Shown here piece by piece: positions 13,700 to 45,759 of a DNA stretch of 64,000 nucleotides. A program made the position numbers and the translations under genes. A model generated the notes under the pieces. The model saw nothing but the letters and a program-made list of their open reading frames with translations. It was not told where the DNA came from and made no database searches. The number at the start of each line of letters is the position of its first letter. The stretch's first letter is position 1. The DNA is from Iphione sp. A-MEVVRFRX5 (lineage: Eukaryota), in NCBI GenBank assembly GCA_976226885.1, contig OZ320323.1, positions 5,208,001 through 5,272,000 on the forward strand, read 5' to 3'.

Positions 13700-13846
13700 T
13701 CTATATAAGTACCATATATCAAAGACAATTGATTTGACTGAAGAGTTTTAGACCTATAAAACCCACAAGAGTGTGACGGAAGGTCGGACAGTCAGCCAGC
13801 AGCATTCCAAGGTCCCCCCCCCCTCTATGAGGTGGGGGACAATAAC
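13700..13846 (+). mobile_element. Dispersed repeat copy A with 3' C/G hairpin (Helitron/Helentron-associated-like)
   Basis: Shares acccac..gtgtgacgg..ggtc..ccctctatgaggtgggggacaata with the 57070-57212 copy. Confidence 0.55.
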
Positions 13847-14289
13847 TAAGGCAGAGTGAAGGGTAGGGAGGGGGACTAAGAGAGAGAATAAAGGGTAGGA
13901 AAGAGGGGCTTAGAGAGAGTGAGGGGGACTAACTGCATTAAATATTAAATACCTGTGAATAGCCCCTTAGATTCCAGGCTTGAGGACCACCATCAGTCTA
14001 TCATACACTAACTCGGCATACTCCAATCCCTTAGTGTATTTTGTCATATTGAACCAATGCATATTCTCTTGGAGTTCCTCACTCAAGCATCTTAATCAAT
14101 CTACAGTACATCTGAGACCCACTGAAGGGGTACTATACTCTTAACACATGGTAAATGCTGTAACTGTCCCCCCTCCGCCTCCCCCCAAAAAAGTCCAAAT
14201 GCTTCAAACAGTTTTATTACCCTAACGCAGTTGACTTCACTATGGAGGTCTTGCCAGTACTAACGAGTATAAGCATGGGACCTCCATGA

Positions 14290-14990
14290 CTATGTGGAAG
14301 TGATTTACCTGCAATGTGAACGTACAATCTGCCACACTTATATTCAGGGGCATGGGTGGAAGTGCTTTACCTGCAGTGTGAACGTACAGTCTGTCACACT
14401 TATATTCAGGGGCATGGGTGGAAGTGCTTTACCTGCAGTGTGAACGTACAATCTGCCATGCTTATATTCAGGGGCATGGGTGGAAGTGCTTTACCTGCAG
14501 TGTGAACGTACAGTCTGTCATGCTTATATTCAGGGGTATGGGTGGAACTGCTTTACCTGCAGTGTGAACATACAATCTGCCATGCTTATATTCAGGGGTA
14601 TGGGTGGAAGCGCTTTACCTGGAGTGTGAACGTACAGTCTGTCACGCTTATATTCAGGGGTATGGGTGGAAGTGCTTTACCTGCAGTGTGAACGTACAAT
14701 CTGCCATGCTTATACATGTATTTAGGGGTATGGGTGGAAATGCTTTACCTGCAGGGTGAACGTACAGTCTGTCACGCTTATATTCAGGGGCATGGGTGGA
14801 AGTGCTTTACCTGCAGTGTGAACGTACAATCTGCCATGCTTATACATGTATTTAGGGGTATGGGTGGAAATGCTTTACCTGCAGGGTGAACGTAGAGTCT
14901 GTCATGCTTATATTCAGGGGTATGGGTGGAAGTGCTTTACCTGGAGTGTGAACGTACAGTCTGTCACACTTATATTCAGGGGCATGGGTG
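14290..14990 (-). repeat. 62-bp tandem x11 copying the exon 18 3' end plus donor
   Basis: 11 copies of CAG|gtaaa counted. Confidence 0.9.
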
Positions 14991-15200
14991 GTGGGATGAC
15001 CTCATCTTCAATCAGGTCCACCAGGTTGGTGACACTTGACATGTAGAGCTTGAGCCGCAGTCCCGCCAGCACTGTTCGCAAGTGGCCCAGCTCCCCAGCT
15101 GTCTGAGCCAGGCTCTCCGCAGCTGGCCCCACCTGGTAACGTAACCGGACGGGCGGCTCGGCCACCGGCGGTGGCAGCTTCTCCTCGGTCTCCCTGCTCG
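14941..15200 (-). CDS. BLTP3: BLTP3 exon 18 (ASRETEEK...LIEDEVIPPPMPLNISVTDCTFTLQ)
   Basis: branch-like tactgac, tcttcttccag| ... CAG|gtaaag, 260 nt, phase 1 to 0. Confidence 0.9.
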
Positions 15201-16002
15201 CTGGAAGAAGATCCCACTCAGTCAGTAACCGTCAGCAGGACACGACAGATCAAACAACACTGGAGGTGGGGGTGTGAAGAGGTTGGGTGGGAGGCATGTA
15301 GGAGGGGTGTGGGGTGTGTGTTGGGACAAGGTAACATCGAAGAGAAATTCATGAGACACACATCAGAGTACACCTTACCACTCTGAACCTGAATGGGGCT
15401 TATACGATCTTTACTAAACATTATATATCATGTTATTCGTTCTGATGACACTTACGTCTTCATTATATATGTATGTACTTTTAGGCATTGCTGGACCTTA
15501 GCGTGTAGGACACACAAATAAGTCATTTCCAAAGATTTTCTCGGAACCATACTCTAATGAAGGCAAAAAAGTCATAACCAAAATAAATCAATAAAATTGT
15601 AAAAAAAAAAGTAATGGTTTAAAATGATACGTAATTTGTGAGGCCCAAAACTAGCATTTCAATCCTTTCAGTTGAAAGAATCCTCGTTCGGGGAGCGGCA
15701 CTTGCATGCTACTTCCAACTTCTCTACAGCTAGCGGCGCACCTCCCACGCGGAGAGCTCCACGCCGCCATAGTGAACAGTAGATGATAAAAAACAGAGGC
15801 ATGCTATTTTCCTGCCACTTCTAGGCAATGGACAAAGGTTCAAAACAATATATTACAAAACAGCACTTAGGAACAACGAACATATGAAGACTGGGTTATC
15901 TACGAGCATTTGTTAGAATGAAAATATCCAGTAAACATGTTCTTTTAACCTAATTTAAAAAAAAAACAAAAACATAAAAAAGCCTGCTGTATTTTTTAAA
16001 AA

Positions 16003-16020
16003 GACGCCATCTGGTGGCAA
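16003..16020 (-). promoter_or_regulatory. CTCF-like motif TTGCCACCAGATGGCGTC
   Basis: Close match to the CCACCAGNTGGCG core; similar motifs near 3745-3760, 19576-19592 and 40942-40956. Confidence 0.4.
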
Positions 16021-17299
16021 TATCTACAACTACCTATGTAGCACACGATGTGAGAGCAGCGCAGACTAGGAAGTATATTCACCGATCACTTTTGGGCTGA
16101 TTGGTCCCGCCACCCCGTCCCTGCCCCCGCCTGCCCCCCCCCCCCCCCCCACGAAGGTCACTGACACCTGTGCTTCGTTTTAATGCTTTAACTGCCATCT
16201 TTGATCCCTTGTAACTTAGCAACTATCTGACCCCCCCAAAAATACCAAATTTGCCGTGAATCATTGGTAATATACCCTCTTTATGCAAACATTCATAGGC
16301 AAATAATTCTATCTGTAAAATTAATAGAGACATTGAACCTTCCCACTGACTTCAATGCTACAGAGCTTTGTTTGTTTACGCTTGAACCTCCCGCCCGTTT
16401 TGAAGGATGCACTCCACTTAGTTAGATGTAACTGTAAATTACGTGATAAGCGATCAGTCAATTATTGGGATGAAAATATCACACGACGTCCACCTCTGGG
16501 ACTGAAGGAATATGGTCTCCCCTGCGTTCTGGTCTCCCTACGGTCTCTCATTATACAGGAAATATACTGTTTGGGACTATGATATAATGGTCTCCCCTGC
16601 CAATTGGTCTTTAAGTGAGAGTCCACTGTATTGGGATGAAAATATTGCACAGCATCAAAGGACCTTCTTCTGCCCCCCTGCATCCTATCACACTAGCCGG
16701 CGCCACATAGCAGCACATGAACTGCACTCGGACCTCGAGCAATCATAACAAGTCTTCTTTCGTCTCTGTACACTGAATTAGTAAACTTTGAACAAATGCA
16801 ATTGACAACACTTATACATGGAGCTGAATAATTAGATGGTGAGGATGATGAATTGGGGATTAGTACTGAACTAGCCCTGTGTTCATTAGTGTGTACGGTC
16901 TCACCAGACCACTGGCAAGACTTCCATCAGCTTTGTGACACAAATTAAAACTAGCTCCCTTTTCATTTGCTGGTGAGATATCCTGTTAGGAAGCAACGTG
17001 ACCTGAAATGGCACCCTTAATTAGATAAAAAAAAAACATGTTAAAAACGCTTAAGTGCACGTAAGAAAACTAGTGATGTAGTTTAACTGTCATCGCTACC
17101 TTATTACTTAAAAGCCACCTGACAAATGACATTAAATAAGAGGTTATTAAATGCCATTTCAAACTGAAATCCCTTCGTTTTCTGCAGTTATCTGCAGGTG
17201 ATCTGCAGGGAAAACAGCAGTTCTGATGAGGATGTGTACTTCAGAGAGAAATACCCCTTCACCAACCCTGTTTAATCTTCCAAGTAGGTGAGTAAGCCC

Positions 17300-17758
17300 C
17301 AGAGTGTATGTGTATGGAAGTAAGTTTGTATTTGGTTTTGTGTCTGTGTTTGTGTATGTGTATTGGTATGAGTTTTGGTCTATGCATGTGTTTGTATGTC
17401 TATGTGTGAGTTTGTGTTTGGATGAATGTGTATGTGTACTGTTTGTGTGTGTGCATGTATGAAAGTTACTTTATCTTTGGTTCTGTGTATGTGTACATGT
17501 GTGTGTCTGTTTTTGTGTATATGTATGTGTGCTTTGGTATGTGTTTCAGTGCGTGTGTTTCTGTGTCTATGTGTGCACCTGTGTTTGGATGTGTGTGTAT
17601 GTGTATATTTGTTTGTGTGTGTGCATGCATGAAAGTGAGTTTGTGTGTACGTGTATGTGGTATGTGTTTCAGTGTATGTATGTGTTTGTGTTTGGACGTA
17701 TGCTTATGGGAATGTGTTTACTTGTGTGTCTGTGTGTATATATGTGTGTGTGTGTACA
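17300..17758. repeat. (GT)-rich degenerate microsatellite
   Basis: Direct inspection. Confidence 0.85.
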
Positions 17759-18310
17759 GACGGGCCTCCTCCACCACCAAAGCTATTCTCTAGGCCTCCA
17801 TGCCCCTTCCTGGAGACCTCACTTCACGGCCACAGAGGACACGTCAAGGACACCGGTTCACATCTCACAGCCACAATGACCACAGCCATCATATCAGGTA
17901 TCAATCGACCAAAAGGACGCTGACCTCAATCTTCTTTTTTTTCGGGGTGGCATCAACAGGTGAAGGAGGTAGTCAGATCACCATGCAGTGGTAGTCGATG
18001 CCTGGGGATGAGTTTGGTTGTACTGCACAAAGCATAAAAGCCAAGAGTAGGACAACCAAAGGAGTCGCCAAACATGGACACTCCTTGCATGTGTTCATAC
18101 TGTCTTTATTTCATCTTATTTTTATTTATAAGGGGTGAGATAAAAGTTTGTACCTTATATACTTAGACGTGTATTCAGTTCTGTTCAAGGTTTGCCAAGA
18201 GTGCATCTTTCACGAAATTTAAAAAGCAATACTTTCTTACGTCGAGTGCTGCTTCATCGTGGGACTAATTCTGATACCCGTATGAAGAAGAAATGATATC
18301 ATGCACATAC

Positions 18311-18385
18311 TTTCAAAGACTTTTAACTGAGGTGAGGTCAAGAGGTCAAGAGGTCGAAACATGACCCCCTTCTTCATGCAGATCA
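18311..18385 (-). CDS. Candidate alternative exon carrying an ATG (18377) for a short isoform, or a 75-nt phase 1-1 cassette
   Basis: Pyrimidine-rich intron 18386-18505 ending cccag|, donor GAAA|gtatgt; in frame with exon 18. Confidence 0.5.
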
Positions 18386-18548
18386 CTGGGCACCGTGAGC
18401 ATTGTGGACTCGAGACAGACGGACAGACAGAGGTGGACAGGAGGAGGTGGACAGGACAGGACAGGCGGTGAAATGCGTTCGAGCAGCTATAAAATACAAG
18501 GTTACCTGAAGCCAGAGTCAGCAAAGTGACGAGATTGGGCCGAGAAGC

Positions 18549-18562
18549 GTTGCCTAGGTGAC
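18549..18562. promoter_or_regulatory. RFX X-box-like motif GTTGCCTAGGTGAC
   Basis: Match to X-box consensus inside a CpG-enriched intronic patch. Confidence 0.5.
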
Positions 18563-20029
18563 GGGATACACATGCCCAAAAAAGTCAAGTTGACATCTCC
18601 AGTTTGCAACGAGCATGCGCGGTGTCTAATAAGGTCGTTAAATGGTTTGACACGTCCAAAGATAAAAGACTCTTTATTTCAATCTACGGCTACTTCCAGA
18701 TCAGCTTTATCAGTTTTACTCTGACTGGGTCGGCCGCTGACAACTGCAGCCTGAGGGAGATTAGAGGTGGACTTAACGAGAATGTTACGACTAATAAAAG
18801 GTATGTGGACATCGAACGTGACTGAAACATGGCATTTAACTGTCATCACTCTTGACATTACTCTTACTTCCCTACCTATAAAAACACACATTTGTTTTAC
18901 GATTGTCTGTCGTATATCAAGAGGATTTTCGGCTCGAAACTTACAAAAACATGTCTGCCTTAATCATGCATCTTACGGCAGTTTGTAAGAGTCTAACTTT
19001 AACGCGGCTTCCACATAATCTCTGGATGGAAATGACGATCGTTTAGAATACGTGTCTGACGAGGTGTTACCAACTAATTTTATGAGAGAGCAAGCGGACA
19101 GGCTAAGCTGACACGTCGACACGGACAGGAGGCACACAGAGCGATAGAAACAGAAACAGAAACCGAAACTATCCCTCGTATCTGGCTCATGTCAGGGACA
19201 TTTCGGTACGGTTCACTTCGTGTAACGTTTACTCGAAGGTCAAATCTTTTAACTCTACGTCTACCGGGCACACAAGCTAGCTGGATGAAGAGGCTTTATC
19301 CATTGTAGTTGTGTCCGTGAGCGCTTATTATGCTGAGCCGAGGTGAGAGGCCATGACTAAACTATCGCAGTTCTGTGCTGGATAGAGGCCTGCTAGGAAA
19401 TGCTACCTACAAGAATCTCTATATATCAAGTGATGAGAGGGTTAAGGACGCCATCTTGATATTTAAAACTAGAGTCAATGCTTACAAGACCTACGTATTG
19501 AGCTTTGTTTTTTCTTTTTAGATTAATCTAAAATCTACTATTATCAATGAACTTATATAAAACTGTTGAGAACTCTTCCAGGTGGCAGCACTATGCACTA
19601 TCTTTGTAACATCTAAAGAATTGTATTCAAACATGTCACCAGCAACGACCTGAACATCGGCCTTTTTTTTGCCGAGTCAATGTTGTTGGAGAAAATATTG
19701 AAATAAAAAAATAACGCTAGTGCTGCTCCCTGATGGCTAGGATCGGCAGAACATCTAAAAGCTATTCCCACGAAGGCAATCCCAGTATAAACATCTACAT
19801 TTACTCACACACCTTCGCAGCTACGTGATCATACCAGACACAAGGAGGTCCAATCTAAAACATCGGCCATCTTGGATTGGCCAAGTCGAGGAAACCCTCT
19901 TGCTGATAACGTATGATCGTGCTTTCACTTCTAAGGAACAGTGCTATAGACACACAGATCTAAAATGCTGCTATTTCACGAGGCGTGACCCTCATGACCC
20001 GAGAGTGGGGTCAGAGGTCAAGGACTGAC

Positions 20030-20180
20030 CTGCGTTGAAGCGCTGGTGGAACTTGTCGAGGTTGATGTTGCCGTACTCGTGAGGAGTCACGTGATGCACC
20101 TGGGCGCTCACCGACATGTTGTCTCCTCTCATCTGGACGATGGCTTCGGTGTTGGCCAGTTTGAAGGACACCACTGACAC
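20030..20180 (-). CDS. BLTP3: BLTP3 exon 17 (VSVVSFKL...FHQRFNA)
   Basis: ggtag| ... G|gtcagt, 151 nt, phase 0 to 1. Confidence 0.88.
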
Positions 20181-20760
20181 CTACCGGCGGCGATCGGGAT
20201 CAAACGAGAGATGTCAATGAGAAGGCGAAGTATATTCTCTGTCTGCCTGTCTGTCAGTTTGACTTTAACATCAATCTTGCATTATATTTCACTAGATACG
20301 TGACTAGCTTAGCCCGAGGAGAACCCCAGTTAGGGTGTCAACAAAGGTCAGAAGGTCATAGGGTCAGACTGTAGCAAGCTTTACTAACGCGTCTTTGACA
20401 ACATTACCCATCCACTTATGTGGAAATGCATAACAATATATTAATACATGTACTTAGCATATGGCTTTGAACACCCACTTCTTTGTTATACTAAGGATGC
20501 ACAACATTAAATAAGTTTTGTGGCGCAACTGCACGAGAAAAATAACTGGTTCACTTTTATCTAATACATGTCTGTTTCAATGTGCTGGGGATCTCTTCCC
20601 AGCAGTAACCTCTTGACCCCATCAGTCTATGCCGATAAAGGGAGGTGACCACTGGGGGGAGAGAGGTATTTTCCTGCATGTGAACAGAGCCATTCGGCCG
20701 TCGTAGTCGGAGCTGACCGCTAGGGAGAGGTGACCGTGAGGAGAGGAGGCGTCTACTCAC

Positions 20761-20996
20761 CACCCCGCGCGCCCGGTCGGCCATGCCGCCGAAGCCGCCG
20801 CTGACGCTGGCCGACTCGTCGCGCCCGTCGCTGTCCGCCACCGACACCGACTCGGACGAGCTGTGGTGGGCCTCGAAGGCCGGCACCTCGGTGGCATTCT
20901 CCAGTTTGAGAAGAACAAAGTCTTCATCGTCACTAGAGGCGCCACTGCGCAGGGACAGCGAGTCCCAGTCATCGGCATCCTCCCTGACGTCCAGCG
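20761..20996 (-). CDS. BLTP3: BLTP3 exon 16 (ALDVREDADDWDSLS...ARGV)
   Basis: ccctgcccag| ... GTG|gtgagt, 236 nt, phase 1 to 0; acidic Ser-rich segment. Confidence 0.88.
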
Positions 20997-20999
20997 CTG

Positions 21000-21430
21000 G
21001 GCAGGGAAGATGGGGAGAGGAACAATGAGAGCGGTTAGAATAAGGATACATATATGTGTTCAAGATGATGACGATAAAAGGAAGACAGGGACAGGAACAA
21101 TGAGAGCGGTTAGAATAAGGATAATGAGAGCGGTTAGAATAAGGATACATCTATGTGTTCAAGATGAGGACGATAAAAGGAAGATGGGGAGAGGAACAAT
21201 GAGAGCGGTTATAATAAAGATAGATATATCTATGTTCAAGATGAGGACGATAAAAGGAAGACGGGGACAGGAACAATGAGATCGGTTAGAATAAGGATAC
21301 ATATATGTGTGTTCAAGATGAGGTCAATAAAGGGAAGAAGGGGACAGGAACACTGAAGAGGTTACAGTCAAGGTAGATATATGTGTGTTTAAGACAAGGT
21401 CGATAAAGGGAAGAGGGGGGCAGGAACAAT
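21000..21430 (-). repeat. ~80-bp tandem x ~6 copying the polypyrimidine tract before exon 16
   Basis: ggaagatggggagaggaacaatgagagcggttagaataaggatac recurs. Confidence 0.8.
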
Positions 21431-21712
21431 TTCACAAATCCATTTTAAAGTCTTTCATTTAGATGTACATACATTGTAAAACTGTACGTGTTGAAAGCAA
21501 AATATGATCCGCGTGTTACTCATTTTGACTTTGGATAACACAGAACAGAAATATCGGTATACCGCAATGACTCATCCAGTCTAAATAGACAATGCATGTA
21601 CAAGTAAATATCAAATTATGAATATCAAGTAGAAGAGAGCACGTGATGTGAGGATTTCAGGAAGAATACTTCATGGGCTCTGCACTTATCGCACCCCACA
21701 GGGCGTTCTTAC

Positions 21713-22162
21713 CTTTGACATTTTGCTTGACCTTTTCCGTCAGTCTACTCAGGTTGGAGAAGGCGTTATTGAATGACTTGCGTATCTCTCCGCCCTTCCT
21801 CTCCCGCTCCGTCGCCGGGTCGTAATGCAGGCTCTCCGAGCTCAGCGCCCTCCCGCGGTGCTGCGGGGAGGAGGACGATGAGTAGCCCCCCCCGCCACTG
21901 TTCATCTCGTGCGCCGTCGTCGACCCGTCCGAGATCTGGATCCGCGGGAAGAGGCTGGACACGTCGGCGGCGGCCGGGTTCCACTGGTGGCCGCGGGAGG
22001 GCGTCTCAGACAGGCCGTGCGGGACGCCGTCGAAGACCACAGGCTGCGCATGCGTGGCGAAGACCGGCTCTGGGCCTGTCAGCTCCGTGTCGCTGTGCGA
22101 CTTGAGCAGAGGCGCCGGAGTTTGCAGGCCATGAGACCGGCCCTCCGAGTTAATGCTACCAC
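21713..22162 (-). CDS. BLTP3: BLTP3 exon 15 (GGSINSEGR...KVKQNVK)
   Basis: ctcttgtag| ... G|gtaaga, 450 nt, phase 1-1, open throughout. Confidence 0.88.
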
Positions 22163-23155
22163 CTACAAGAGAATCACAACCACACGTTTAACACAGACCC
22201 TCCAAGTTAATGCTACAACCTATGAGAGAATCACAACGACACGTTTAACACAGACCCTCCAAGTTAATGTTACCACCTATGAGAGAATCCACACGTTTAA
22301 CACAGGCCCTCCAAGTTAATGTTACCACCTACAAGAGAATCACAACGACACGTTTAACACAGACCCTCCAAGTTAATGTTACCACCTATGAGAGAATCCA
22401 CACGTTTAACACAGACCCTCCAAGTCAATGCTACCACCTACAAGAGAATCACAACGACACGTTTAACACAGACCCTCCAAGTTAATGTTACCACCTATGA
22501 GAGAATCCACACGTTTAACACAGGCCCTCCAAGTCAATGCTACCACCTACAAGAGAATCACAACGACACGTTTAACACAGACCCTCCGAGTTAATGCTAC
22601 CACCTACGAGAGAATCACAAACACATATTTAACACAGATCCTCTAAGTTAATGCTACACCTGCGAGAGAATCACAAACACACATTTAACACAGGCCCTCC
22701 AAGTTAATGCCACCTACAAGAGAATCACAACCACACAATCACAATCACACAATTAACACAGACCTCCAAGTTAATGCTACACCTGTGAGAGAACCACAAA
22801 CGCACATTTAACACAGACCCTCCAAGTTAATGCTACCACCTGTGAGACAACCACAACCGCACGCTTAACACAGGCCCTCCGAGTTAATGCTACCACCTAC
22901 GAGAGAATCACAAACACATTTTTAACACAGACCCTCCAAGTTAATGCTACACCTGCGAGAGAATCACAAACACACATTTAACACAGACCCTCCTAGTTAA
23001 TGTTACCACCTATGAGAGAATCACAACCACACATTTAACACAGGCCCTCTGAGTTAATGCTACCATCTACAAGAGAATCATGAACACATGTTTAACACAG
23101 GCCCTCTGAGTTAATGCTACCACCTACCTGAGAACAACAAACACGTTAAACACAG
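22140..23155 (-). repeat. 52-57 bp tandem x ~18 copying the exon 15 acceptor plus first ~22 exon nt
   Basis: attctcttgtag|GTGGTAGCATTAACT recurs. Confidence 0.9.
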
Positions 23156-23499
23156 GCCTGTCATCTAAGAGAAGTGTGATTTCTGGTATCCCTGATCTGC
23201 GTTATTGCTTTCCACTGACATTTCCTATGAACAATTCCGAACAAAAGTGGAAAAGTATACAAATTAAAAGCAAACGTCTGCTTGACAATGATTTCCGCAC
23301 TTCTTGGACAATCAAACTTATTCCCTGTTTGATATTGATGAGCACCCTCTTATTAACTGACGGTTAAAATGGCGGACTCGGTGGAAGAGGTCATTATTTT
23401 ACAGCCTCGTCTATTCTACACGGGACTCTGGTGAGCTAAGTACGAAGATGTGAACAGAGTCGAGAACAGATATACCTCTGTTAGCAAAGTAGAATAGAA

Positions 23500-23640
23500 C
23501 CTCAGGACTGGGGACACCCATGGTTCCCAGTGGAACCTCAGGACTGGGGCATCAGGACTGGAGCCACCCATAGTTCCCAGTCGAACCCAGGACCAGGGAC
23601 ACCCATGGTTCCCAGTGCGACCTCAGGACTAGGGCAGAGT
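23500..23640. repeat. Short ~35-bp tandem
   Basis: ctcaggactgggg..cccatggttcccagt recurs. Confidence 0.7.
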
Positions 23641-23836
23641 CCAAGACAACACTGTGCCAGTGAATAATGTCGGAAATACGAGGTTGGTCGGTTATGGAGT
23701 CATTGGTAAGGAGGCGTGACTGTGGATCTGTATTACCTTCCCCCACTCCCCGCGCCCGTGACCCCCTTCCCTCCCCCTACATATCACCGACCCCCCTCCC
23801 CTCTCCCCCCCGGGGGGTGGGGGGGGGTTCACATAC

Positions 23837-25082
23837 CGAGAGCCGAGTCGTCCGCCACGTCTCGTGCCGCCGCCATCATTCGTGCTGCATCTTCGGGCAG
23901 GTCGTCGAGCATCTTGAGTTCGTCCGAGTCCTCGCGACTCGTCGTCCCCATGCCGCCGCCGCTTCCGCTTCCGCCGCCGGCGGCGGCCGACGAGGCGGGC
24001 ATCTCGGGGACGGGCGGGCAGATGAGCGCCACCTCCAGCTCCCTCAGCTTCACCGCCAGCACCAGGCTCTTCTCACCCGCCGCCAGGGGCGCGGGCGGCG
24101 GCGGCGCCTGCTGCTGCTGGCCAGCGCGCAGGCGCAAGATGGCGGCCGTGTCCTCCTTGAGCTCGGCGGAGAACTTGGTGAGCGTCTCGATGAGTCTCAT
24201 GAGGAAGACGTACTGGTAGTGGTTGAGTTGCAGGCTCACCCGCTGCCCCACCTGAACCAGCAGGTGCGTGTCCGCGCACGGTCGCTCCGGAAGCGCTCGC
24301 CGCGGGCGAGGCGCCGGCGCTACCGGAGCGCCCCCTACGTCGCCGTTCATGTAGCCCTGCTGAGGCAGTAGCGGCGGTGGCGAGGGCGACCCCCTCTCCC
24401 CCGCCGCCGCCGCCGCCGCCGCCGCTCCCACCGCCGTGCCGTCGTTGCTGTAGTACTGCTTCAGCAGGCTGGCCGACCCGGACCGCTCCAACACGCGCGG
24501 CGAGTTCCGGTCGCCTGCACCGCGCGCCGCCGCCGCCCGCGCCGAACTCTCGCTGGCGAGCGGCGTGGCCAGCCAGAGCGTGAGCGGGAAGGACTCGACG
24601 AAGGGCACGGGCCGACCGTGCGCGCTGGGCACGCCCAGGAACTCGAGCCAGAACTGGTCGACTGTCAGACACCACACGTCCTTGGTAGCGTCGAGCTTGA
24701 GCGAGTCCGTGCTCATGCTGAAGTAGGTGACGCCGCCCTCCGACCGCACGGCCGCCGCCAGGGCGCGCTCCGGGGGCGCCACCCTGCGGCCGAGTACAAT
24801 GTCACCGAAGGCCTGGTCGAGGTACACATCGTTCTCCTTCTGGACGTGCCGCCGGAAGAGGCTGGGCAGCGGCAGGAAGTCCTCGTCGCGCCGGGGAAAG
24901 TCGGCGCGGGCGGCGGCGAAGAGGGGTGATGCTTCGTAGGTGCGCAAGAGGGCGCCCAGATCGGCGAGCGAGGTGCGCTGCTCGAGGTGACAGTTGGTGA
25001 AGGTGAGGCGCGAGGCCTGCACCTGCAGACTGTCCGGGCGGTCCGGCTGGCCACGAGGGGGCGCCTCGGCGGGCAGGATCAC
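23837..25082 (-). CDS. BLTP3: BLTP3 exon 14 (1246 nt, very GC-rich)
   Basis: cttgtcag| ... G|gtatgt, phase 0 to 1; corresponds to ORF 23829..25082. Confidence 0.93.
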
Positions 25083-25299
25083 CTGACAAGGGGGAGTAAC
25101 ACGCCCGATATATTATACATATATAAACAAATACCTGAGGTTTAGGAAATAACCGACTTACTAGATAATGCCAGGAGGATTCTGGACAATGTTCTCATGG
25201 AGAATTTGACGAGATGGTTTGGAATTTTGCAAATAAAATATAATAGAAAAAGTAAATAGAAACAAACAAGAAGTGAATGAATTGACAGAGGGCATCTCT

Positions 25300-25680
25300 C
25301 CATCTGACTTACCCTTGGCACGACAGTATTGATCATATTGTCTATCTGACTTACCCCTGTCATGAGAGCATCTATCGTAATGTCTATCTGACTTACCCTT
25401 GTCACGAGAGCATCTATTGTAATGTCTATCTGACTTACCCTTCGCACAAGAACATCTATTGTAATGTCTATCTGACTTACCCTTGTCACGAGAGCATCTA
25501 TCATAATGTCTATCTGACTTGCCCTTGACACAAAAGCATCTATCATAATGTCTATCTGACTTATCCTTGACACAAGAGCATCCATCTTAATGTCTGTCTG
25601 ACTTACCCTTGGCACAAAAGCATCTATTGTAATGTCTGTCTGACTTACCCTTGGCATGAGAGCATCTATCTTAATGTCTG
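25300..25680 (-). repeat. 42-bp in-frame tandem x9 copying the exon 13 end plus donor
   Basis: ORF 25142..25711 reads (DIxIDALxxR-VSQ) nine times. Confidence 0.92.
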
Positions 25681-36900: not shown

Positions 36901-38459
36901 TCCTCTCTGAAGCTGACTACAGTTATCCAACCACATCCCCGGCTAATCGTTTAGGGATGCGGTTGGATGACCACGGTAAAGAGTTAATTATATCATACAA
37001 AGACACGATGCATAGTAGGTTGTTAAATGTAGCGGAATCCAGTGAGCATTCACAGGGCAAATCATTACTACACACTACCTAAATAGAGAAAACACATGAA
37101 CATGGGGATACATGCAAAAACGTGTTGTGAAGCTTTACATAGACAGCAGCTGACTTAGCAGCATGGGGAGGGAAGCCAGAGCAGAAGCAGATGAGTGAGG
37201 ATGTGAGTCGGTCCTTGAGAGGCTCACACATAAAGCTCACACACAAAGAAGGCCCTCAACCTACATGTACAGTGAAGGGGAGAGAGTACACCTATGAGTA
37301 CAGATCTACGGGTATACAAGGACTGGGCACTGGGAGGACGGCTACAGCCAAGATTGAAAGACCATGCAAAGTGTGTCTGTGGGTGATACTTTGAAACCCT
37401 TAAAATGAAATGTCTTAAAATGAGAGCAGGGAACGGTAACCTAGTGTCCCCCCTCCTTTCAGAGGCCCCATCTCCGAAGGCCAGAATGAAGAGGAGAAGG
37501 AGGAGGAGGAGGAGGAGTTTGCTGCAAGAAGCTGTAAAGCGACTGATAAAAGAAAGTATACCTGCTTCTTGACTACCGGTCCCCAAGGGATCGACTGAAA
37601 AGGGTATACATAAAAGGTGTGCCTCACCTTAATCGTATTATTATTATGTGATATGAAATGAGGATTTTATGTAAATGAGAAGACCTGGCATGTAGATACG
37701 CGAGTGCTGCAGGCACCTACTCTATGGCACTGCAGTCCCATAAACATACATAAAACAAACCAACCGATAGGGGTACTTTATGTAAATAAGAAGACCTGGC
37801 ATGGAGATATGCTGGTGCTGCACATGCCTACTCTATGGCACTGCAGTCACATAAACATACAAACATAGAACAAACCAACTGCTAGGGGTACTCTATTCAC
37901 ATGATCTACCAACAAAAGCGTGCTGTTAGATAGTCACTTCAAACAAATGCTTATTACAGGTCTGGATGTACAGAGAGTGGGTACAAGGAGGAGGGGGAGG
38001 AGGTGATAATAGGGGCAATGGACTTTATAATCAAGTCGCCATGTTTGTGTGGATAGCTGGACATTTTATAAAACGTTTATCTTAACAACGGCACAGAGCG
38101 CCTGTTCCACAGGGAGGCCTTACATGTGTATAAATGAGGATGATTTTATCAAAATGAATAACCATCTCATGATGCGACACAGCAAATGAACAAAAAAACT
38201 AATCTTCCAATGCCCAAAATTACTAACAAACGGAACATGGCTTTCAATAGGGGTGATAGACTGAGCAATTAGTAGATGAATGAGAGGGTACAACAATATT
38301 GACTGTAGCTAATGAAACAGGAATAAAAGAATAAGGTCTTTCTGAGCATGACATTCTATGATACATGTGGCAATGACCTGAGGCCACTGCCAAATGATCA
38401 TCACATATAGACATATATGAAGGTGTAATACTCAGCCTTTCCATCTAAACTTATCATGA

Positions 38460-38985
38460 TGAAACTACCTTGAATTATGTAATCACAGAGGTGGAGGTCA
38501 GTATGATGTGAAGGTCATTCTATTGTACAAGAGGTACAAGGCCTCTACACCCTTTTCATTGGAAGTGTAGAGGTGTACTCAATCTAGCCGGAGCCATGTC
38601 ATCACAGATGTGGAGGTCAGTGTGGCCAGTGTACCAGTGGTGCGAGGTCTTCACTATGTTCTACATCAAGATGTGGAGGTGGTTCTGAACCTACCTTGAG
38701 CCATGTTATCACAGATGTGGAGGTTACTGTGACCAGTGTACCAGTGGTGCAAGGTCTTTAATACCTTCTACATCAGGATGTGGAGGTCATTCTGAACCTA
38801 CCTGGAGCCATGTTGTCAAAGATGTGGAGGTCATTGTGGCCAGTGTACCAGTGGTGCAAAGTATCTACAACCTCATAATTGGAAGTGTGGTGGTATTCAG
38901 AACTTACCTGGAGCCATATCATCACAGAGGTGGAGGTCAACGCGGCCAGTGTACAAGTGGTACGAGGTCTCTACAACCTCATACT
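38460..38985 (-). repeat. ~105-110 bp tandem x4-5 copying the exon 9 end plus donor
   Basis: acctacctggagccatg..atcacagatgtggaggtca..gtggccagtgtac recurs and matches the exon. Confidence 0.85.
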
Positions 38986-39109
38986 TGGAGAATAGCTTGG
39001 CCATAGCGTTCTGACTCTTGGTTCCTGTACGTTGTTGTTGCTGCTGTTGTTGTTGTTGTTGATGCTGTTGCTGCCGAACTGCTTGGTTGGCTATTGAAGG
39101 TCCCTGAGC
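38908..39109 (-). CDS. BLTP3: BLTP3 exon 9 (poly-Q; VETSYHLYTGRVDLHLCDDMAP)
   Basis: tttcag| ... G|gtaagt, 202 nt, phase 0 to 1. Confidence 0.92.
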
Positions 39110-39889
39110 CTGAAACAACAGTGGTCCATACAAATACAGCTACTGAACTACGAGTACATACACACAAACATATACATATATACAGTTTATCATATGTACA
39201 TGAATTTACATTGGTTCCACCCAAAACCAATGACCTTGTAATAGACAATACAGCTTAACCTACTGATCTATTGGGCAACCAAACTTGCAAAACGTGATTA
39301 AAATGTTTTCACAACGAACAAATCCGTTAAAACTAACCAAATCATCATCAGCAGAAAACATCAGTCACAGAGGGGCAACTGTGAGCTGGAAAAGTGTCTG
39401 TGCTTTCGTTTGTCTAGTGAACAATGTGCTGACATGATTCAAGATAAGCTGATAACAGGCGAAGAATTGACAACCTCAGAGAAACATGTGTAATGCTAAA
39501 TATGCGCCGATTCCTACCGCAATCTGTAACGCTAACACTCTTCAAAACACTTTCTTTGTAAGAGGCCTACGAAATGATATATATTCTTCAATTGATTTCA
39601 GTATAAATGAACACTAACTCTCCTTCTATGACGCAGTCTTCCACTGCACAGTATTTTACAAAACAAACAACTTAAGAGAAGATTTACGCTTACTACTTGA
39701 ATATTCCCCTTGAGTTAATCAATAGATATTTGAACTAGACATAAAAAAATTTTAATTGTTACAGTTTATATAAACATTCAATTAGCTTTGACAAGCATTT
39801 GTTTCCAGCGCATAGGAAGTAAACAGTCTCTGTCAAGTGTGCATGCATGACAGTGCTGAATAGGCAAATATGGTTAAGGTAGGAGAGAG

Positions 39890-40055
39890 CAGGGAACACA
39901 CCTTGGGCTTCTCAATCGGCGAATTTGGTTAAAGCAGGAGAGAGGAACGCACCTTGAGCTTCTAAAGAGGTGAATATAGGAAGTGAGAGAGGAACACACC
40001 TTTTCAAAAGACAAATATGGTTAAAGTAGGAGAGACACACACCTTAAGCTTCTCA
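39890..40055 (-). repeat. ~45-50 bp tandem x4 copying the exon 8 end plus donor
   Basis: AAG|gtgtgt or AAG|gtgcgt at 40042, about 39999, 39952 and 39901. Confidence 0.75.
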
Positions 40056-40206
40056 GTAGCTCTCAACTTTGCTTGATGGGATGATTTTTGAATGACTTCT
40101 TTCAATGAGTTGGCAAAAACAATGGCTGCCTTGAGTTGCGAGTCAGTCAGCACCCACAGGAGGTCGTCTAGGTTGAACTGTACACGGGACGCCACCATGC
40201 CGCAGT
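40043..40206 (-). CDS. BLTP3: BLTP3 exon 8 (DCGMVASR...LDDLLWVLTDSQLKA...EKLK)
   Basis: tatcag| ... AAG|gtgtgt, 164 nt, phase 1 to 0. Confidence 0.93.
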
Positions 40207-40376
40207 CTGATAGATAAAGATAAGATTACTCAACAGTAATGCAGGTGCAGTTTAAACATGAGAGCTCATCAACTAGTCTTTCTCAATGATGATGCGGTTT
40301 GGGTTTGAATACAAGTGCTCATCAGCTAGTCTTTACTCAACAGTAATGCACTTTTAGTTTAAGTACAAAAGCTTAC

Positions 40377-40614
40377 CAGCTAGTCTTTTCTTAATGGTGA
40401 TGCGAGTCTTGCTCTGATTTGCTATAAGCCTCAATGGTGTGGTGGCCAGCGCTGGGTCGGATGCATCAAGCGCATTTGCCTCAATTCGAAGCGTCTGCCA
40501 CTCTGCCTCCTTGAAGATGAGGATCTCCCCCCTCAGTTCGTCCTTGACCCTTGTCAGACGCAGGTCAGCCAGCTGCCAGAGCGGCGTCTTACTCTGCACA
40601 ATGATGCGTGAGAT
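40377..40614 (-). CDS. BLTP3: BLTP3 exon 7 (ISRIIVQS...KKRLA)
   Basis: ttgcag| ... G|gtaagc, 238 nt, phase 0 to 1. Confidence 0.93.
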
Positions 40615-40986
40615 CTGCAACAAGAAGGGGCATAGACACGGCAATGAGGAAATGGAACCCAAAGCAGACGAAAAAAAACATAATTACCTATTAAGAACAC
40701 TTGAAAAAACAGCATCCCATTAAAGTACGTGTACGGAAAAGACGCCTGCAAAAGAGTGCGACTTATATTAAAGAAAACTAGAATGATAACAGTAACTAAG
40801 GGGAACGCAGTTCTTTCCGCACGCAGCGTCTAAACATGGCGACCTCCCGACAATCAGTAACAGTAATAAAGGTTGTTATATCCCGTATAAATCATTTTAC
40901 AGTCATTAAAAGGACAGTTACATGCCGAACTTACGATACATGGCGCCCCCTGGTAATGGGAGGGAGAGATCGGATGGCCTAGTTAC

Positions 40987-41095
40987 CTGGATAGAGGCCT
41001 GGAAGGTCGGGGCCTTGAAGTTCACGACGACCGAGTTGATGGAGACGAACATTCCGTCGATGATACGCTCAGCGAAGCCGTATTTCCCTCCAGTA
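40987..41095 (-). CDS. BLTP3: BLTP3 exon 6 (TGGKYGFAERIIDG...QASIQ)
   Basis: gccag| ... CAG|gtaact, 109 nt, phase 2 to 0, YGFAE motif. Confidence 0.93.
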
Positions 41096-42739
41096 CTGGC
41101 AGCAGAGGAAGATTACATGTATATCATAATATATCTCACAGGCTTCAAGCGAGGAGCCAGTGTAAACGATGCTCCTGAACCTTATCTCACCTCTATGTGG
41201 TATGGTCGACTGTGTAACACACTGTTAGGGTGACTAGTACAGAACTGTATACCACACTCTTGGGGTGATTGGTACAGAACCACACTCAGCCTCCAAACAG
41301 AACAAAATCATGCAAATTTGGCTGAAAAAAAACGACAAAACTCATGCAAATTCGGTCAACACACTTCATGTCCCATAATTTATGAGGTTAGACCACAATA
41401 TGACCAAAACCACGAGTGCCACCACTTGAGCTTGGAACGGAGGTGTGGTTGCAAACTGTACATTATTAACTATAACTGTGCCATCAGTACAATATACTCT
41501 ACATTTTTTTTCACGCAAAATTAGGGTGAGATGAAAGTAATACTGGTGTGCTTACATTGCTCTTCATGCTTGGGAGCTTATCTGGCTGTAGCCCACGAGG
41601 CTTCATGCAGTACAGCCAAATGAGCACCCAACCATGAACCACCACTCCATGGTGGTATTCTATGAATAGCAAGGCTACTCGATGGGGGTAGCGATGGTCT
41701 GTTCATTGTTAAATCTTGCTTTGTAAGCCTCACTGACACACACATATATATATATATATATAAATGTATATAATTTCGTAAATATACAATAACAGGGCAT
41801 CAGCAAGGCTGGGTCTCAGCCACTGTTGTACTAATAACAATGACAGTATTATATTTAATATTACAGTATACTGTATATGAAAATATTTTGACATACCAAA
41901 TGTTACACTGATCAATATTGATTTTATCATATGTAGTCCGTATATAATGGTGTATCATGTCTCGGTAGAAGAAAGGACAAGGAGACTGTAACCCTCCACT
42001 CTTTAACCGATACTGTAAGAAGAGTGACAGATGGAGAAATAAATACACTACAATGTACATTCGACACTAAAACAATACGAAGAGATCTGTACCAAAAAAA
42101 GAGTGGGGGGAGGCACTAGGTCTAATGGGGTAATTTACTGATCGTCCCTTTGCATAATGGCGTCAAATGATACTATGAGACGTTCTACTAGGTAGCGTGG
42201 AAGGCTTCCGCTACGACAGCGTCACTGTGACGTCATTGCGCAATGGGTTGAACTGATATAAAGTACATGGATTTAACGTTCATGAGCATTTGACATCTAC
42301 GCTAGACCAAAATGACGAGCTGTTATGTAAGGCTCACCGTGTGTTAGTGACAGGAAACTTACAAGGGGGAGAGTGGGACGGGTTTGGCAGTGGGTATGAC
42401 TGACAGAGGGCAAACCGTAACGGGTACAGAGTAAGAACGAGCCACAAAGACCAACGTTCAACAGACTTACTAACAACATGCTTTAGAAGCTAAAAAAAAA
42501 CAAGCCCTGACACTCAACTAAGGAACTAAAATATCCAAAGTAAATCAGCCCTTAAAAACCCGGGTTCTCCTAGGGAATACTACTGGACAGACGATCGTAT
42601 GAAAACAGCCTCTAACGCATACGATTAGTAACGGTTTATTCCTCCTAATTTAATAAATCTAAAAAATCTAATACGTTCCAAAACAGGTTCTCGGGGTGGG
42701 ACTAAAGGAATGCACTCACCTCTACTGGATGAGTGCATG

Positions 42740-42990
42740 ACCTCCAACACAAGGATTATGAGCCATAACGAAACCGACCAGTCTGTCTGTCCATGACTCC
42801 TGGACCTCCAACACAAGGACATGAGTCATAACGAAACCAAGCAGTCTGTCTCTCCATGACTCCAGGACCTCCAACACAAGGACATGAGTCATAACGAAAC
42901 CAACCAGTCTGTCTCTCCATGACTCCTGGACCTCCAACACAAGGATGCAAGTTGTAATGAAACCGACCAGTCCATCTCTCCAGGACTTCT
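42740..42990. repeat. 63-bp tandem x ~4
   Basis: gacctccaacacaaggacatgagtcataacgaaacc recurs. Confidence 0.85.
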
Positions 42991-43379
42991 GGACGACTCA
43001 GCCGCCAATACAACTCAATGTCTCAGTGATCGGAGTGAGTCTATCTGTGAGCAGCTCTTACATGTGACAGCCCTGGCGGCCACAGCTCTAGACATGGAGA
43101 GAGCAATCCATGTAAAAACAAACGAATCTGCCTAAAAGTAAGAACTGTTTAGAATTTCACACTACGTGAATGGTGGTGTGCCATCATGGGAGACATGGGT
43201 CTAAAACAACTTTATATTTTAGTTTTTTATGAGGAGTTGAGACAGACTGCTGGCTACGCACTGAGACTGTGAACGGGACCCGCACCCAAACCAACACCCA
43301 CACCCACACCCACACACACACATACACTATCCATGCACAAAGGGACAAGACGAGAACTAGTGCTGCCTCTCCTGTTTAC

Positions 43380-43418
43380 CTTGCTGCGGCGTCAGGCGGC
43401 GGGGCGGCGGATCCAGCA
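43380..43418 (-). CDS. BLTP3: BLTP3 exon 5, symmetric micro-exon (S-AGSAAPPPDAAA), possibly a cassette
   Basis: ctttctttaaccccag| ... AG|gtaaac, 39 nt, phase 2-2, GC-rich and open; skipping it keeps the frame. Confidence 0.7.
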
Positions 43419-43724
43419 CTGGGGTTAAAGAAAGCGACCGTCACTCAGGGTCTTCATCCCTACAGCTCTCCCACCCACCCCCTCCCCCCAATACTCAATA
43501 ATAGTTATAGTGACACTTATAAACCCCATCTTGAAATGAATAATAAGGACAGTCACGAAAACATGTCTGAATGGTCTGCCAACAGCCATTCAGTCAAGCG
43601 GAACTAATTTGTTCTAGCTGAATGAGCACACTATGACATAGCTACATGCCTTGGAATTTCCAATCTGCTTGTCTGTGTACTGGAAAGGAGAAAGTCTACT
43701 GAAATACATTAATTTGACCTTTAA

Positions 43725-43908
43725 ATTACTGGAAATGAGCAGAAATAAGCCAGTGCCATGTGCCCATGTAAGATGAACATCATATGGAAAATTCAGCTCA
43801 TTTGACTGGAGGGCATTGAAGTTTTAAGACCCGCAAGGTTGGGAAGGAAGGTCGGCTGGTTGCATAGCAGAATTCCTAAGCCCACCCCCCAAATAAGGTG
43901 GGGAACAA
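43725..43908 (+). mobile_element. Dispersed repeat copy C, same family
   Basis: aaatgagcagaaataagccagt...aaggtcgg...cccacc..ggtggggaacaat. Confidence 0.5.
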
Positions 43909-44089
43909 TGACAGTTACAGCTCCTCCTGTTTCCCTTCCTAAATACTAATACTAAATCTACCTATGCCATACAGAACAGATATTAGTTGATGTAATATAA
44001 CGTGTTGGTTAATACGGTATTAATTATATAAGAATTAAGTAAAACCTCTTTAGCGAGATCATTATGACTATTTAAATATTTACGTGTAC

Positions 44090-44560
44090 ATCTGTATTGA
44101 CATAGTGTCACTCACACCCCAACCCTTACCTGACCCTATATACAAGTACACCTGTATTGACATAGTATCATTCACACCCCACCCCTTATCTGTCCTTATA
44201 TACAAGTAAACCTGTATTGACATAGTGTCACTTGCACGCTGCCCCTTACCTATGCATATATACAAGTACACCTGTATTGACACAGTGCCACTCACACACT
44301 GCCCCTTACCTGTCCCTGTACATATGTATACCTGTACTGACATAGTGCCACTCACACGCTGCCCCTTACCTGTCCCTGTACATATGTATACCTGTACTGA
44401 CATAGTGCCACTCACACGCTGCCCCTTACCTGTCCCTGTACATATGTATACCTGTACTGACATAGTGCCATTTACACGCTGCCCCTTACCTAACCCTATA
44501 TACATGCATATGTACCCCTGTATTGACATGGTGTTATCCAGACGCTGCCTCTTACCTGTA
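44090..44560 (-). repeat. 60-bp tandem x8 starting at the exon 4 donor
   Basis: AG|gtaagg recurs every 60 nt. Confidence 0.88.
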
Positions 44561-44638
44561 GCTGGAGAGGTTGGAAACGTTGCACGGCTGGCGGGGGATG
44601 TCACACGTCTCCATGTCCACAACAATCTCATCAAGGTA
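44556..44638 (-). CDS. BLTP3: BLTP3 exon 4 (YLDEIVVDMETCDIPR...)
   Basis: gacag| ... AG|gtaaga, 83 nt, phase 0 to 2. Confidence 0.9.
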
Positions 44639-44734
44639 CTGTCAAATCAATACAAAAACATGAACACATTAAAAGAATCAGACATACTGATGCAGAAATT
44701 CACCGTAATCTGGAGGTTTTGCTTATGCACTTTG

Positions 44735-45160
44735 AATCACTAGGAAAGTATGGGTATGTACTTTGCATTACAAGGCGGGTTGAAGTATGTATTTTGAATC
44801 AACAGGAGGGTATGGGTAGGTACTTTGCATTGCAAGGCAGGTTCGAATATGTACTAAGTTTGAATCACTAGGAGGGTATGGGCAGGTACTTAAAATCGCA
44901 GTGTGGGTTCAAGTTTGTACTTTGAATCACTAGGAGGGTATGGGCAGGTACTTTAAATCACAGTGCGGGTGCAAGTTTGTACTTTGAATCAATAGGAGGG
45001 TATGGGCAGGTACTTTAAATCACACTGTGGGTTCAAGTTTGTACTTTGAATCAATAGGAGGGTATGGGCAGGTACTTTCATTCACAAGGTGGGTTCAAGT
45101 ATGTACTTTGAATCACTACTAGGAGGGCATGAGTTCAAGTATGTACTTTGAATCCCCAGG
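44735..45160. repeat. ~60-bp tandem x ~7
   Basis: tttgaatcactaggagggtatgggcaggtacttt recurs. Confidence 0.85.
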
Positions 45161-45246
45161 CAGATATGGAATGAAGCTACTTATACTCTACCCTCCAGTT
45201 ACTACAATCTCCACCTAAACACAGTAAGAAATGTTCCGTGACTTAC

Positions 45247-45285
45247 CAGACAAATTGGCTGGGCTTTCAATCGGGTCCACTGGAT
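45247..45285 (-). CDS. BLTP3: BLTP3 exon 3 (IQWTRLKAQPICL)
   Basis: tacag| ... CTG|gtaagt, 39 nt, matches recalled family motif IPWTKLKTHPICL. Confidence 0.93.
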
Positions 45286-45759
45286 CTGTAAGCAGTTGAT
45301 TAAATTTGTGTAAAAAACACGGAGAAAAATGGTTGACTTGTATAACAAAATATTAATGATGATGACTAGCGGACAGAATGGTGGAGTGGATAACCATGAC
45401 AACAATACAAACGATTCAGCGCAGATCCACTCCACTGTAAAAAAAGGGGGAATTAACTTGGTCACACAGCGCCAGGGTTAAAGGCCTGAATAAGAAATAA
45501 CCCTCTGCCTATTGACCGTACGTACATTGACACTAGCACGCACTGGTTACTGGGTGAATACCTACCCCCCCCCCTCCCCCCACCCATCCCACCTGCGAAC
45601 CTGCTGCTCATATGAAGGGGTATCCAGGTCAATGATGGGGGGTGAGGGGGTGAGGGAGGGGTGAAGGTAGGTAAAGGGGCGGGGGGTTGAGGGAGGGGTG
45701 AAGGTAGGTAAGGGGGAGGGGGGGCTTGCTCTACTACTGGGGTGGCGAGCTTGTGTTAA

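What the first reader, a model, noticed from the sequence alone, without database searches (positions are those of the whole stretch)
14290..44640. Systematic tandem duplication of exon edges: ladders of copied splice sites at eight or more BLTP3 junctions
Seen: many intronic minisatellites are not random intron DNA. Their unit is the exon terminus plus its splice site, with the functional site at one end of the array. Donor ladders: exon 4 (x8), exon 8 (x4), exon 9 (x4-5), exon 10 (x3), exon 13 (x9), exon 18 (x11). Acceptor ladders: exon 15 (x18) and candidate exon X1 (x2). The exon 16 polypyrimidine tract is also copied (x6). Established: tandem duplication of AG|GT-containing segments is a proposed route to intron gain and splice-site turnover. 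Inference: this lineage either has a mutational bias that seeds repeats at exon-intron boundaries or tolerates/selects splice-site arrays (decoys, U1 loading platforms, recursive splicing). I am not aware of this density being described for a single gene.
Basis: partly seen in the sequence, partly recalled or inferred. Interest (0 to 1): 0.82.

Follow-up and report, generated by a model that had tools for sequence, protein, structure and literature searches.

The report
Minisatellites copying splice junctions ("mirages")
In one worm gene for a lipid-transfer protein (BLTP3), seven intronic tandem repeats are built from the edge of the neighbouring exon plus its splice site; this is the "mirage" minisatellite already known from amphioxus, here unusually dense but with no sign that the extra splice sites are used or selected.

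Summary
The window holds a minus-strand BLTP3 gene (19 exons, ATG 58364, stop 11530, 1,701 codons). Seven of its 36 splice junctions head a tandem array whose unit is the exon edge plus the splice site. Six are donors (e4 x8, e6 x3, e8 x4-5, e9 x3, e13 x9, e18 x11) and one is an acceptor (e15 x18). Two more arrays (e16, e19) copy only the polypyrimidine tract and stop 7-8 nt before the AG. I found no ladder at my exon 10.

This kind is known: "mirage" minisatellites of amphioxus, and the human F7 intron-7 VNTR, where the most upstream donor is chosen. This scan already reported it in another gene of the same genome (s1-351984).

Only the exon-proximal sites give an open frame. Decoy use would give a stop or frameshift in six of seven ladders. 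The GT/AG of decoys is no better conserved than other columns. A related species shares the intron positions e9-e18 but has none of the arrays. So they are young and most likely neutral passengers, not intron births or conserved regulators.

Junction enrichment is 2-4 fold (P 0.003-0.09, depending on the null), so suggestive only. No RNA run was listed, so splice-site use is inferred.

The parts
11530..58364 (-).
   Evidence: Pfam PF24917 hits are colinear along the exons. Splice sites were placed by script. The frame is open through all exons with 0 internal stops.
44086..44559 (-). e4 donor ladder: 60-bp unit, 8 donor copies (7 with GT). The array starts about 4 nt inside the exon (exon ends at 44556).
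40226..40404 (-). e6 donor mirage: 54-bp unit (27 nt exon + 27 nt intron), 3 copies. Decoy GT is mutated to AT. The array fills most of the 170-nt intron.
38480..38989 (-). e8 donor mirage: 107-bp unit (about 81 nt exon + 26 nt intron), 4-5 copies. The exon ends at 38908.
   Evidence: The exon end matches the Pfam profile to position 335.
35522..35730 (-). e9 donor mirage: 81-bp unit (about 30 nt exon + 51 nt intron), 3 copies. The exon ends at 35695. TRF reports only 35522-35678.
25302..25679 (-). e13 donor ladder: 42-bp unit (31 nt exon + GTAAGTCAGAC), 9 copies, 7 with intact GT. It is the only ladder that stays in frame and open.
22141..23155 (-). e15 acceptor ladder: 57-bp unit (polypyrimidine tract + AG + about 22-25 nt of exon), 18 copies, all with AG. 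It has 109-bp higher-order units. The functional copy is last (exon starts at 22162).
21024..21430 (-). 77-bp array whose unit starts with the exon 16 polypyrimidine tract. There are 6 tract copies. The array ends 7-8 nt before the AG (exon starts at 20996).
14294..14991 (-). e18 donor ladder: 62/68-bp unit (51 nt exon + 11 nt intron), 11 copies, all with GTAAAG or GTAAAT. The exon ends at 14941.
   Evidence: Pfam profile position 1292 ends e18 and position 1293 starts e19.
12668..13056 (-). 34-bp array (about 10 copies). Its last, degenerate unit supplies the polypyrimidine tract of the exon 19 acceptor (exon starts at 12667).

Best explanation
These are 'mirage' minisatellites. In a genome that makes minisatellites at a very high rate, a first tandem duplication of 40-110 bp happened to straddle a splice junction. 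Unequal exchange then grew the array into the intron. The exon-proximal copy remains the working splice site and the other copies are intronic passengers. For donors this fits 5'-to-3' choice of the first site, as shown for the human F7 VNTR. For the acceptor ladder, only the last AG is followed by the real exon and its donor.

Shown: the anatomy, the exon origin of the units, the open frame only with proximal sites, and the absence of the arrays in a relative.

Inferred: which sites the spliceosome uses, the growth mechanism, and neutrality.

The 2-4 fold excess at junctions is left partly unexplained. A local mutational or retention bias near exons is likely.
For: - Units hold 22-81 nt of exon sequence that is ancestral. 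It matches the BLTP3 Pfam profile up to the junction and the orthologous exons of a relative at 58-91% amino-acid identity.
- Using the exon-proximal site at every ladder gives 5,106 nt without a stop.
- Decoy use gives a premature stop or frameshift in all ladders except e13.
- Decoy GT/AG columns are not better kept than random adjacent column pairs: the share of pairs at least as conserved runs from 0.18 to 0.89.
- Higher-order periods (57/109/218 and 62/130) and 84-91% matches between copies are typical of unequal-exchange turnover.
- The relative has the same intron positions e9-e18 but no junction array.
- The exon share of the unit ranges from 0.07 to 0.82, as expected for seeds that straddle the junction at random rather than break at it.
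- Precedents: amphioxus mirages do not disturb splicing (PMC3087553, PMC3902484), and F7 pseudo-sites stay silent because the most upstream donor is taken (PMC1557585).
Against: - No RNA data were available, so use of the proximal sites rests on the reading frame only.
- Pure chance placement predicts 1.5-3.5 junction arrays, not 6-7. Two further arrays stop within 8 nt of an AG. Something beyond neutral random seeding seems to act.
- Decoys in e13, e15 and e18 are nearly all intact (7/9, 18/18, 11/11). That could also reflect selection rather than youth.
Confidence: 0.72

Rival explanations
1. A lineage-specific mutational bias creates tandem duplications preferentially at exon-intron junctions. 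Candidate causes are breaks or fork stalling at exon-positioned nucleosome edges, transcription- or splicing-coupled damage, and higher duplication rates in the GC-richer exon DNA. On this view the mirages mark a mechanism, not chance straddling.
For: - 6-7 junction arrays against 1.5-2.0 expected (P 0.003-0.012).
- Two more arrays end 7-8 nt from an acceptor, and one starts 4 nt inside an exon.
- By my tally, array density is about 1.9 per kb in short introns and 0.8 per kb in long ones.
- Four in-frame arrays sit inside exons despite selection.
- Many first-reader notes report the same pattern in other windows of this genome (unchecked).
Against: - With the per-intron null the excess is weak (3.5 expected, P 0.09 for 6 and 0.027 for 7).
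- Breakpoints are not at the junction itself. The exon share of the unit varies from 0.07 to 0.82.
- 6 donors against 1 acceptor is not significant.
- This is one gene only, and no mechanism is shown.
Confidence: 0.3
2. The ladders are selected, functional arrays. They would act as decoys or U1-binding platforms that strengthen the upstream exon, as recursive splice sites, or (for e13) as a tunable in-frame 14-residue insert.
For: - Decoy sites score as high as the real ones in e4, e13, e15 and e18.
- The e13 ladder is in frame and open through 9 units.
- Each e15 unit carries a polypyrimidine tract, then AG, directly followed by GT.
Against: - There is no extra conservation of GT/AG.
- Decoys are decayed in e6, e8 and e9.
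- Use of the decoys is non-productive in 6 of 7 ladders.
- The arrays are absent in the relative.
- The introns are short (0.2-3.5 kb), unlike known recursive-splicing introns (my own knowledge).
Confidence: 0.1
3. The arrays are traces of intron gain or splice-site sliding by tandem duplication of AG|GT-containing exon segments (Rogers model).
For: The units contain AG|GT, and the e6-e7 intron (170 nt) is mostly array.
Against: - Intron positions e9-e18 are shared with a relative that lacks the arrays.
- The exons meet at consecutive Pfam profile positions (224/224 and 1292/1293).
- Exon 7 does not start with sequence like the start of the intron.
Confidence: 0.04
4. The arrays are assembly artefacts, that is, mis-expanded repeats.
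For: The window has six N gaps. Repeat copy number is hard to assemble. An amphioxus mirage was mis-assembled in a draft genome (PMC3087553).
Against: - Copies differ by 9-16% and show ordered higher-order patterns, unlike collapsed or duplicated reads.
- No N gap touches a junction array.
- The same pattern is noted in many windows.
Confidence: 0.04

Closest known systems
Amphioxus 'mirage' minisatellites (Adh3, troponin C, globins BflGb6/9, PGBD5)
   Same: They are tandem minisatellite units that span an exon-intron boundary, at both 5' and 3' boundaries. Units are 10-160 bp. Many copies keep AG/GT. The functional copy sits at the exon end. Regular splicing is reported as undisturbed (PMC3087553, PMC3902484).
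   Different: This is a different phylum: earlier notes of this scan take it for an annelid-type worm. The density is higher, with 7 of 36 junctions in one gene plus two tract-only arrays. There is no RNA or polymorphism evidence here.
Human F7 intron 7 37-bp VNTR
   Same: The first repeat unit spans the exon-donor boundary. Identical pseudo-donors follow the real one and stay silent, because the most upstream site is selected (PMC1557585). This is the best model for the e13 and e18 ladders.
   Different: It is a single junction in a mammal and has been tested by experiment. Here there are several junctions, including an acceptor ladder, and none has been tested.
Intron gain by tandem duplication of AGGT segments (Rogers model; vertebrate and plant cases, PMC3265369, PMC4974935)
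   Same: It involves tandem duplication of a segment that carries splice signals.
   Different: In that model the duplication creates a new intron inside an exon. Here the introns are old and shared with a relative, and the copies merely lengthen them.
Earthworm metallothionein exon-4 duplications and intronic minisatellites (PMC12783039)
   Same: It is an annelid gene with duplicated exon copies that do not appear in the transcript, and with minisatellite-rich introns.
   Different: Those are whole-exon duplications in one gene family. They are not described as junction-spanning arrays.

Membership tests
Mirage minisatellites (amphioxus type) | Head-to-tail array of minisatellite-sized units | tested here: met
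   TRF periods are 42-107 bp, with 3-18 copies and 72-89% matches.
Mirage minisatellites (amphioxus type) | The unit spans an exon-intron boundary (exon edge plus splice signal) | tested here: met
   Six arrays hold 22-81 nt of exon plus GT or AG. One (e4) holds about 4 nt of exon plus the donor. The exon parts match Pfam PF24917 and the orthologous exons.
Mirage minisatellites (amphioxus type) | The authentic junction is the terminal, exon-side copy and the other copies lie in the intron | tested here: met
   Only the proximal sites give an open frame of 1,701 codons.
Mirage minisatellites (amphioxus type) | Regular splicing is not disturbed (shown by cDNA) | not testable with these tools
   No RNA run was listed, and no same-species transcript protein is in the database.
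Mirage minisatellites (amphioxus type) | Length instability or polymorphism between haplotypes | not testable with these tools
   No reads or second haplotype were available. Higher-order periods hint at turnover.
F7-type donor pseudo-site VNTR | Pseudo-donors identical to the authentic donor, directly downstream of it | tested here: met
   e13: 6 of 8 decoys are identical to AGG|GTAAGT. e18: 9 of 10 decoys are identical to CAG|GTAAAG.
F7-type donor pseudo-site VNTR | Pseudo-sites stay silent and the most upstream site is used | not testable with these tools
   This is inferred from the reading frame only.
Intron gain by tandem duplication (Rogers model) | The intron is absent in relatives and bounded by the two copies of the duplicated segment | tested here: not met
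   The relative has the same introns for e9-e18, and the exons join at adjacent Pfam positions. The introns from e1 to e9 were not compared.
Recursive splice sites | A 3' splice site juxtaposed to a 5' splice site, used stepwise in very long introns | tested here: inconclusive
   e15 units carry a polypyrimidine tract, then AG|GTGGTA. But the intron is 1.7 kb, the GT side is weak, and there is no RNA to test.

The most novel reading that the evidence does not exclude
This worm lineage has a DNA-level process that seeds tandem duplications preferentially across exon-intron junctions. The process might be tied to exon-positioned nucleosomes, to transcription or splicing, or to recombination hotspots. 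Mirages would then be its footprint, and it would continuously supply spare splice sites and raw material for exon-edge evolution.
Probability: 0.3. Interest if true: 0.8.

Novelty: new member of a known kind. Interest (0 to 1): 0.5.

Why it matters
Mirages have been reported gene by gene, almost only in amphioxus, and their origin is stated to be unclear (PMC3087553). A genome in which about a fifth of the junctions of a single gene carry one would allow three things:
- A genome-wide test of whether tandem duplication is biased towards splice junctions.
- A measure of how spliceosomes ignore up to 17 equally good neighbouring sites.
- A look at how often such arrays feed splice-site turnover or in-frame exon extension. 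The e13 ladder is a natural candidate.

For annotation the point is practical. Gene predictors can pick a decoy copy and break the frame.

Tried and rejected
- RNA evidence: the one run search (kind rna, window 20500-26400) listed nothing. Read laying could therefore not be used, and DNA runs were not retrievable either.
- Protein word search with exon 14 gave only four single-exon calls at 31-56% identity and no same-species transcript.
- Contigs of P0002 and P0003 had no DNA.
- The original mirage paper (PMC117041) is not held.
- Rfam: no hit in the window.
- Arrays 42739-42994 and 29629-29857 were checked and set aside. Their units show no similarity to any exon edge of the gene, although they contain GT motifs.
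- My exon 10 donor has no repeat.
- A hypothetical exon 12 between e11 and e13 was not found by conservation, and the frame is intact without it.
- Test for selection on decoy signals: negative.
- The costly representative protein search was not used because the protein identity was not in doubt.
Full report
**What is there**

The window is very rich in minisatellites: 105 TRF rows. A BLTP3 gene lies on the minus strand.
- Stop-free minus-strand segments hit Pfam PF24917 (BLTP3A_B) in colinear order. The profile positions are e2 16-69, e5 108-148, e6 147-224, e7 224-282, e8 273-335, e9 341-367, e10 372-514, e11 513-550, e14 579-775, e17 1157-1201, e18 1219-1292 and e19 1293-1327.
- I placed every acceptor and donor by unique sequence anchors and found the last exon by frame.
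- The model has 19 exons. The ATG is at 58364 and the stop at 11532-11530. The coding length is 5,106 nt, or 1,701 codons.
- An in-script stop-codon count on this model found no internal stop. The joined product was not printed, saved or searched.
- The model uses the exon-proximal site at every repeated junction.

**Checking the ladders**

I read each array on the minus strand and located every copy of the 24-nt junction motif. Seven junctions head an array built from their own sequence.

| Junction | Coordinates | Unit | Copies | Exon part of unit | State of GT/AG |
|---|---|---|---|---|---|
| e4 donor | 44086-44559 | 60 bp | 8 | about 4 nt | 7 of 8 have GT |
| e6 donor | 40226-40404 | 54 bp | 3 | 27 nt | both decoys have AT in place of GT |
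| e8 donor | 38480-38989 | 107 bp | 4-5 | about 81 nt | 3 of 4 decoys have GT |
| e9 donor | 35522-35730 | 81 bp | 3 | about 30 nt | 1 of 2 decoys has GT |
| e13 donor | 25302-25679 | 42 bp | 9 | 31 nt (+11 nt intron) | 7 of 9 have GT |
| e18 donor | 14294-14991 | 62/68 bp | 11 | 51 nt (+11 nt intron) | all 11 have GT |
| e15 acceptor | 22141-23155 | 57 bp | 18 | about 22-25 nt | all 18 have AG |

- The 77-bp array at 21024-21430 copies the exon 16 polypyrimidine tract six times. It stops 7-8 nt before the AG.
- The 34-bp array at 12714-13056 runs, through one degenerate unit, into the exon 19 tract.
- A blind scan of all 36 junction 24-mers against their own and all other introns found own-intron copies only at the seven junctions. 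The exception is a GT-microsatellite artefact at e7. The rates are 0.57 per kb in the own intron and 0.023 per kb in other introns.
Its 'exon 8, 9, 10' fit my e6, e8 and e9, and my e10 donor has no ladder.

**Direction of copying**

The exon is the source, not the product.
- The duplicated exon ends match the family profile right up to the junction. For example, e18 ends at profile position 1292 and e19 starts at 1293.
- They also match the exons of a related species, which are 58-91% identical in protein.

**Comparison with a relative**

Exon 14 found a 56%-identical ORF on a 1-Mb ENA contig. I read 28.6 kb of that locus (L001, L002).
- It has the same exons e9 to e18 in the same order.
- It has few tandem repeats, and none contains a junction.
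- The e9, e13, e15, e16 and e18 arrays are therefore younger than the split of the two species. The introns are older than the arrays.
- This argues against intron gain and against long-term function.

**Would the decoys matter?**
- A position weight matrix from the gene's own sites scores many decoys as high as the real site. This holds for e4, e13 and e18, and for several e15 copies.
- Using any decoy donor in e4, e6, e8 or e18 meets a stop within nine codons.
- In e9 the shift is 92 or 173 nt, so the frame is lost.
- Every upstream e15 acceptor adds sequence that contains a stop.
- Only the e13 ladder stays in frame and open, adding 14 residues per unit.
- Across the aligned copies, the GT/AG columns are not better conserved than random adjacent column pairs. 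The share of pairs at least as conserved runs from 0.18 to 0.89 in the seven arrays.
- So there is no sign of selection either to keep or to destroy the signals.
- Higher-order periods (57/109/218 and 62/130) point to growth by unequal exchange.

**Is it more than chance?**

An array contains a junction only if its first duplicated unit did. There are 32 non-coding arrays and 36 junctions.

| Null model | Expected | P for 6 observed | P for 7 observed (with e9) |
|---|---|---|---|
| Random seed placement in the gene | 1.5 | 0.004 | not computed |
| Same, arrays collapsed to one unit | 2.0 | 0.012 | 0.003 |
| Placement conditioned on the intron that holds each array | 3.5 | 0.09 | 0.027 |

- The third null is very conservative. 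It takes the crowding of arrays in short introns as given.
- Counting arrays within 50 nt of a junction gives 9 observed against 2.9 expected (P 0.002).
- The excess is therefore 2-4 fold. From one gene it is suggestive, not decisive.
- Many first-reader notes, and one follow-up (s1-351984), report the same pattern elsewhere in this genome. I did not test those.

**What it is**

This is the known 'mirage' minisatellite.
[quoted passage not shown] They were later seen in amphioxus troponin C, globin and PGBD5 genes.
- They occur at both 5' and 3' boundaries, and splicing is unaffected.
- The mechanism of origin is called unclear (PMC3087553; PMC3902484).
- The human F7 intron-7 VNTR is the worked-out functional model. 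Identical pseudo-donors follow the real one and stay silent, because the most upstream site is taken (PMC1557585).
- I found no description of mirages in annelids in the held literature. One earthworm paper notes exon duplicates that are absent from transcripts (PMC12783039).

**Limits**
- No RNA run was listed. Site use is therefore inferred from the reading frame.
- No reads could be laid, so copy numbers and the artefact rival rest on internal evidence. The copies are diverged and ordered, and no N gap touches a junction array.
- The introns from e1 to e9 could not be compared with the relative.

**Verdict**

The kind is known and was already reported by this scan in another gene of the same genome. 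The arrays are most likely neutral, young passengers that are tolerated because splice-site choice is positional. An unexplained 2-4 fold excess at junctions deserves a genome-wide test.

Noticed in passing
window 32906-32965 (minus); L001 about 499-558: This is a 60-nt, in-frame, stop-free cassette exon candidate between e10 and e11. It would add EWPPQAIDENTWDANTCCGF. It has an acceptor and a GTAAT donor. It is more strongly conserved at the nucleotide level with the relative than its flanks (alignment mean 77%). TGACCT (branch-point-like CTGAC) repeats precede it in both species.
   Followed up: partly
window 18492-18589 (minus); L001 14649-14746: This is a block of about 98 nt in intron 17, nearly identical to the relative. 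It contains an X-box-like GTCACCTAGGCAAC and ends in CTTCAG|GTAAC. It could be a conserved alternative first exon or a regulatory element (see note s1-347283). Rfam gave no hit.
   Followed up: partly
window 12060-12273 (minus, inside e20): This is an in-frame coding minisatellite of 39 bp x 5.5, giving 13-residue repeats (PGTPPGV..DQR) before the C-terminal coiled coil. Other in-frame coding repeats are at 39031-39070 (poly-Q), 34875-34931 and 11876-11924.
   Followed up: no
window 59600-63900 (minus): A retrotransposon lies upstream of the BLTP3 start. The ORF at 60150-61823 has RVT_1 and RT_RNaseH domains. A 575-aa ORF upstream of it has no Pfam hit. Recombinase-like sequence follows. The element looks like a DIRS/Ngaro type.
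   Followed up: partly
window 40207-40376: The e6-e7 intron is only 170 nt, and about three quarters of it is mirage copies. Arrays also make up 57-67% of introns e3-e4, e13-e14 and e15-e16. Intron length in this gene is therefore largely set by minisatellites.
   Followed up: partly
window 1852-1879: An interstitial telomere-like repeat, (CTAACC) x 4.7.
   Followed up: no
L001 2785-3588 and 11178-11234: In the relative, a G-rich 19-bp array (43 copies) starts about 20 nt after the e11 donor, and a 28-bp repeat lies about 45 nt after the e14 donor. Both are close to donors but do not contain them.
   Followed up: partly
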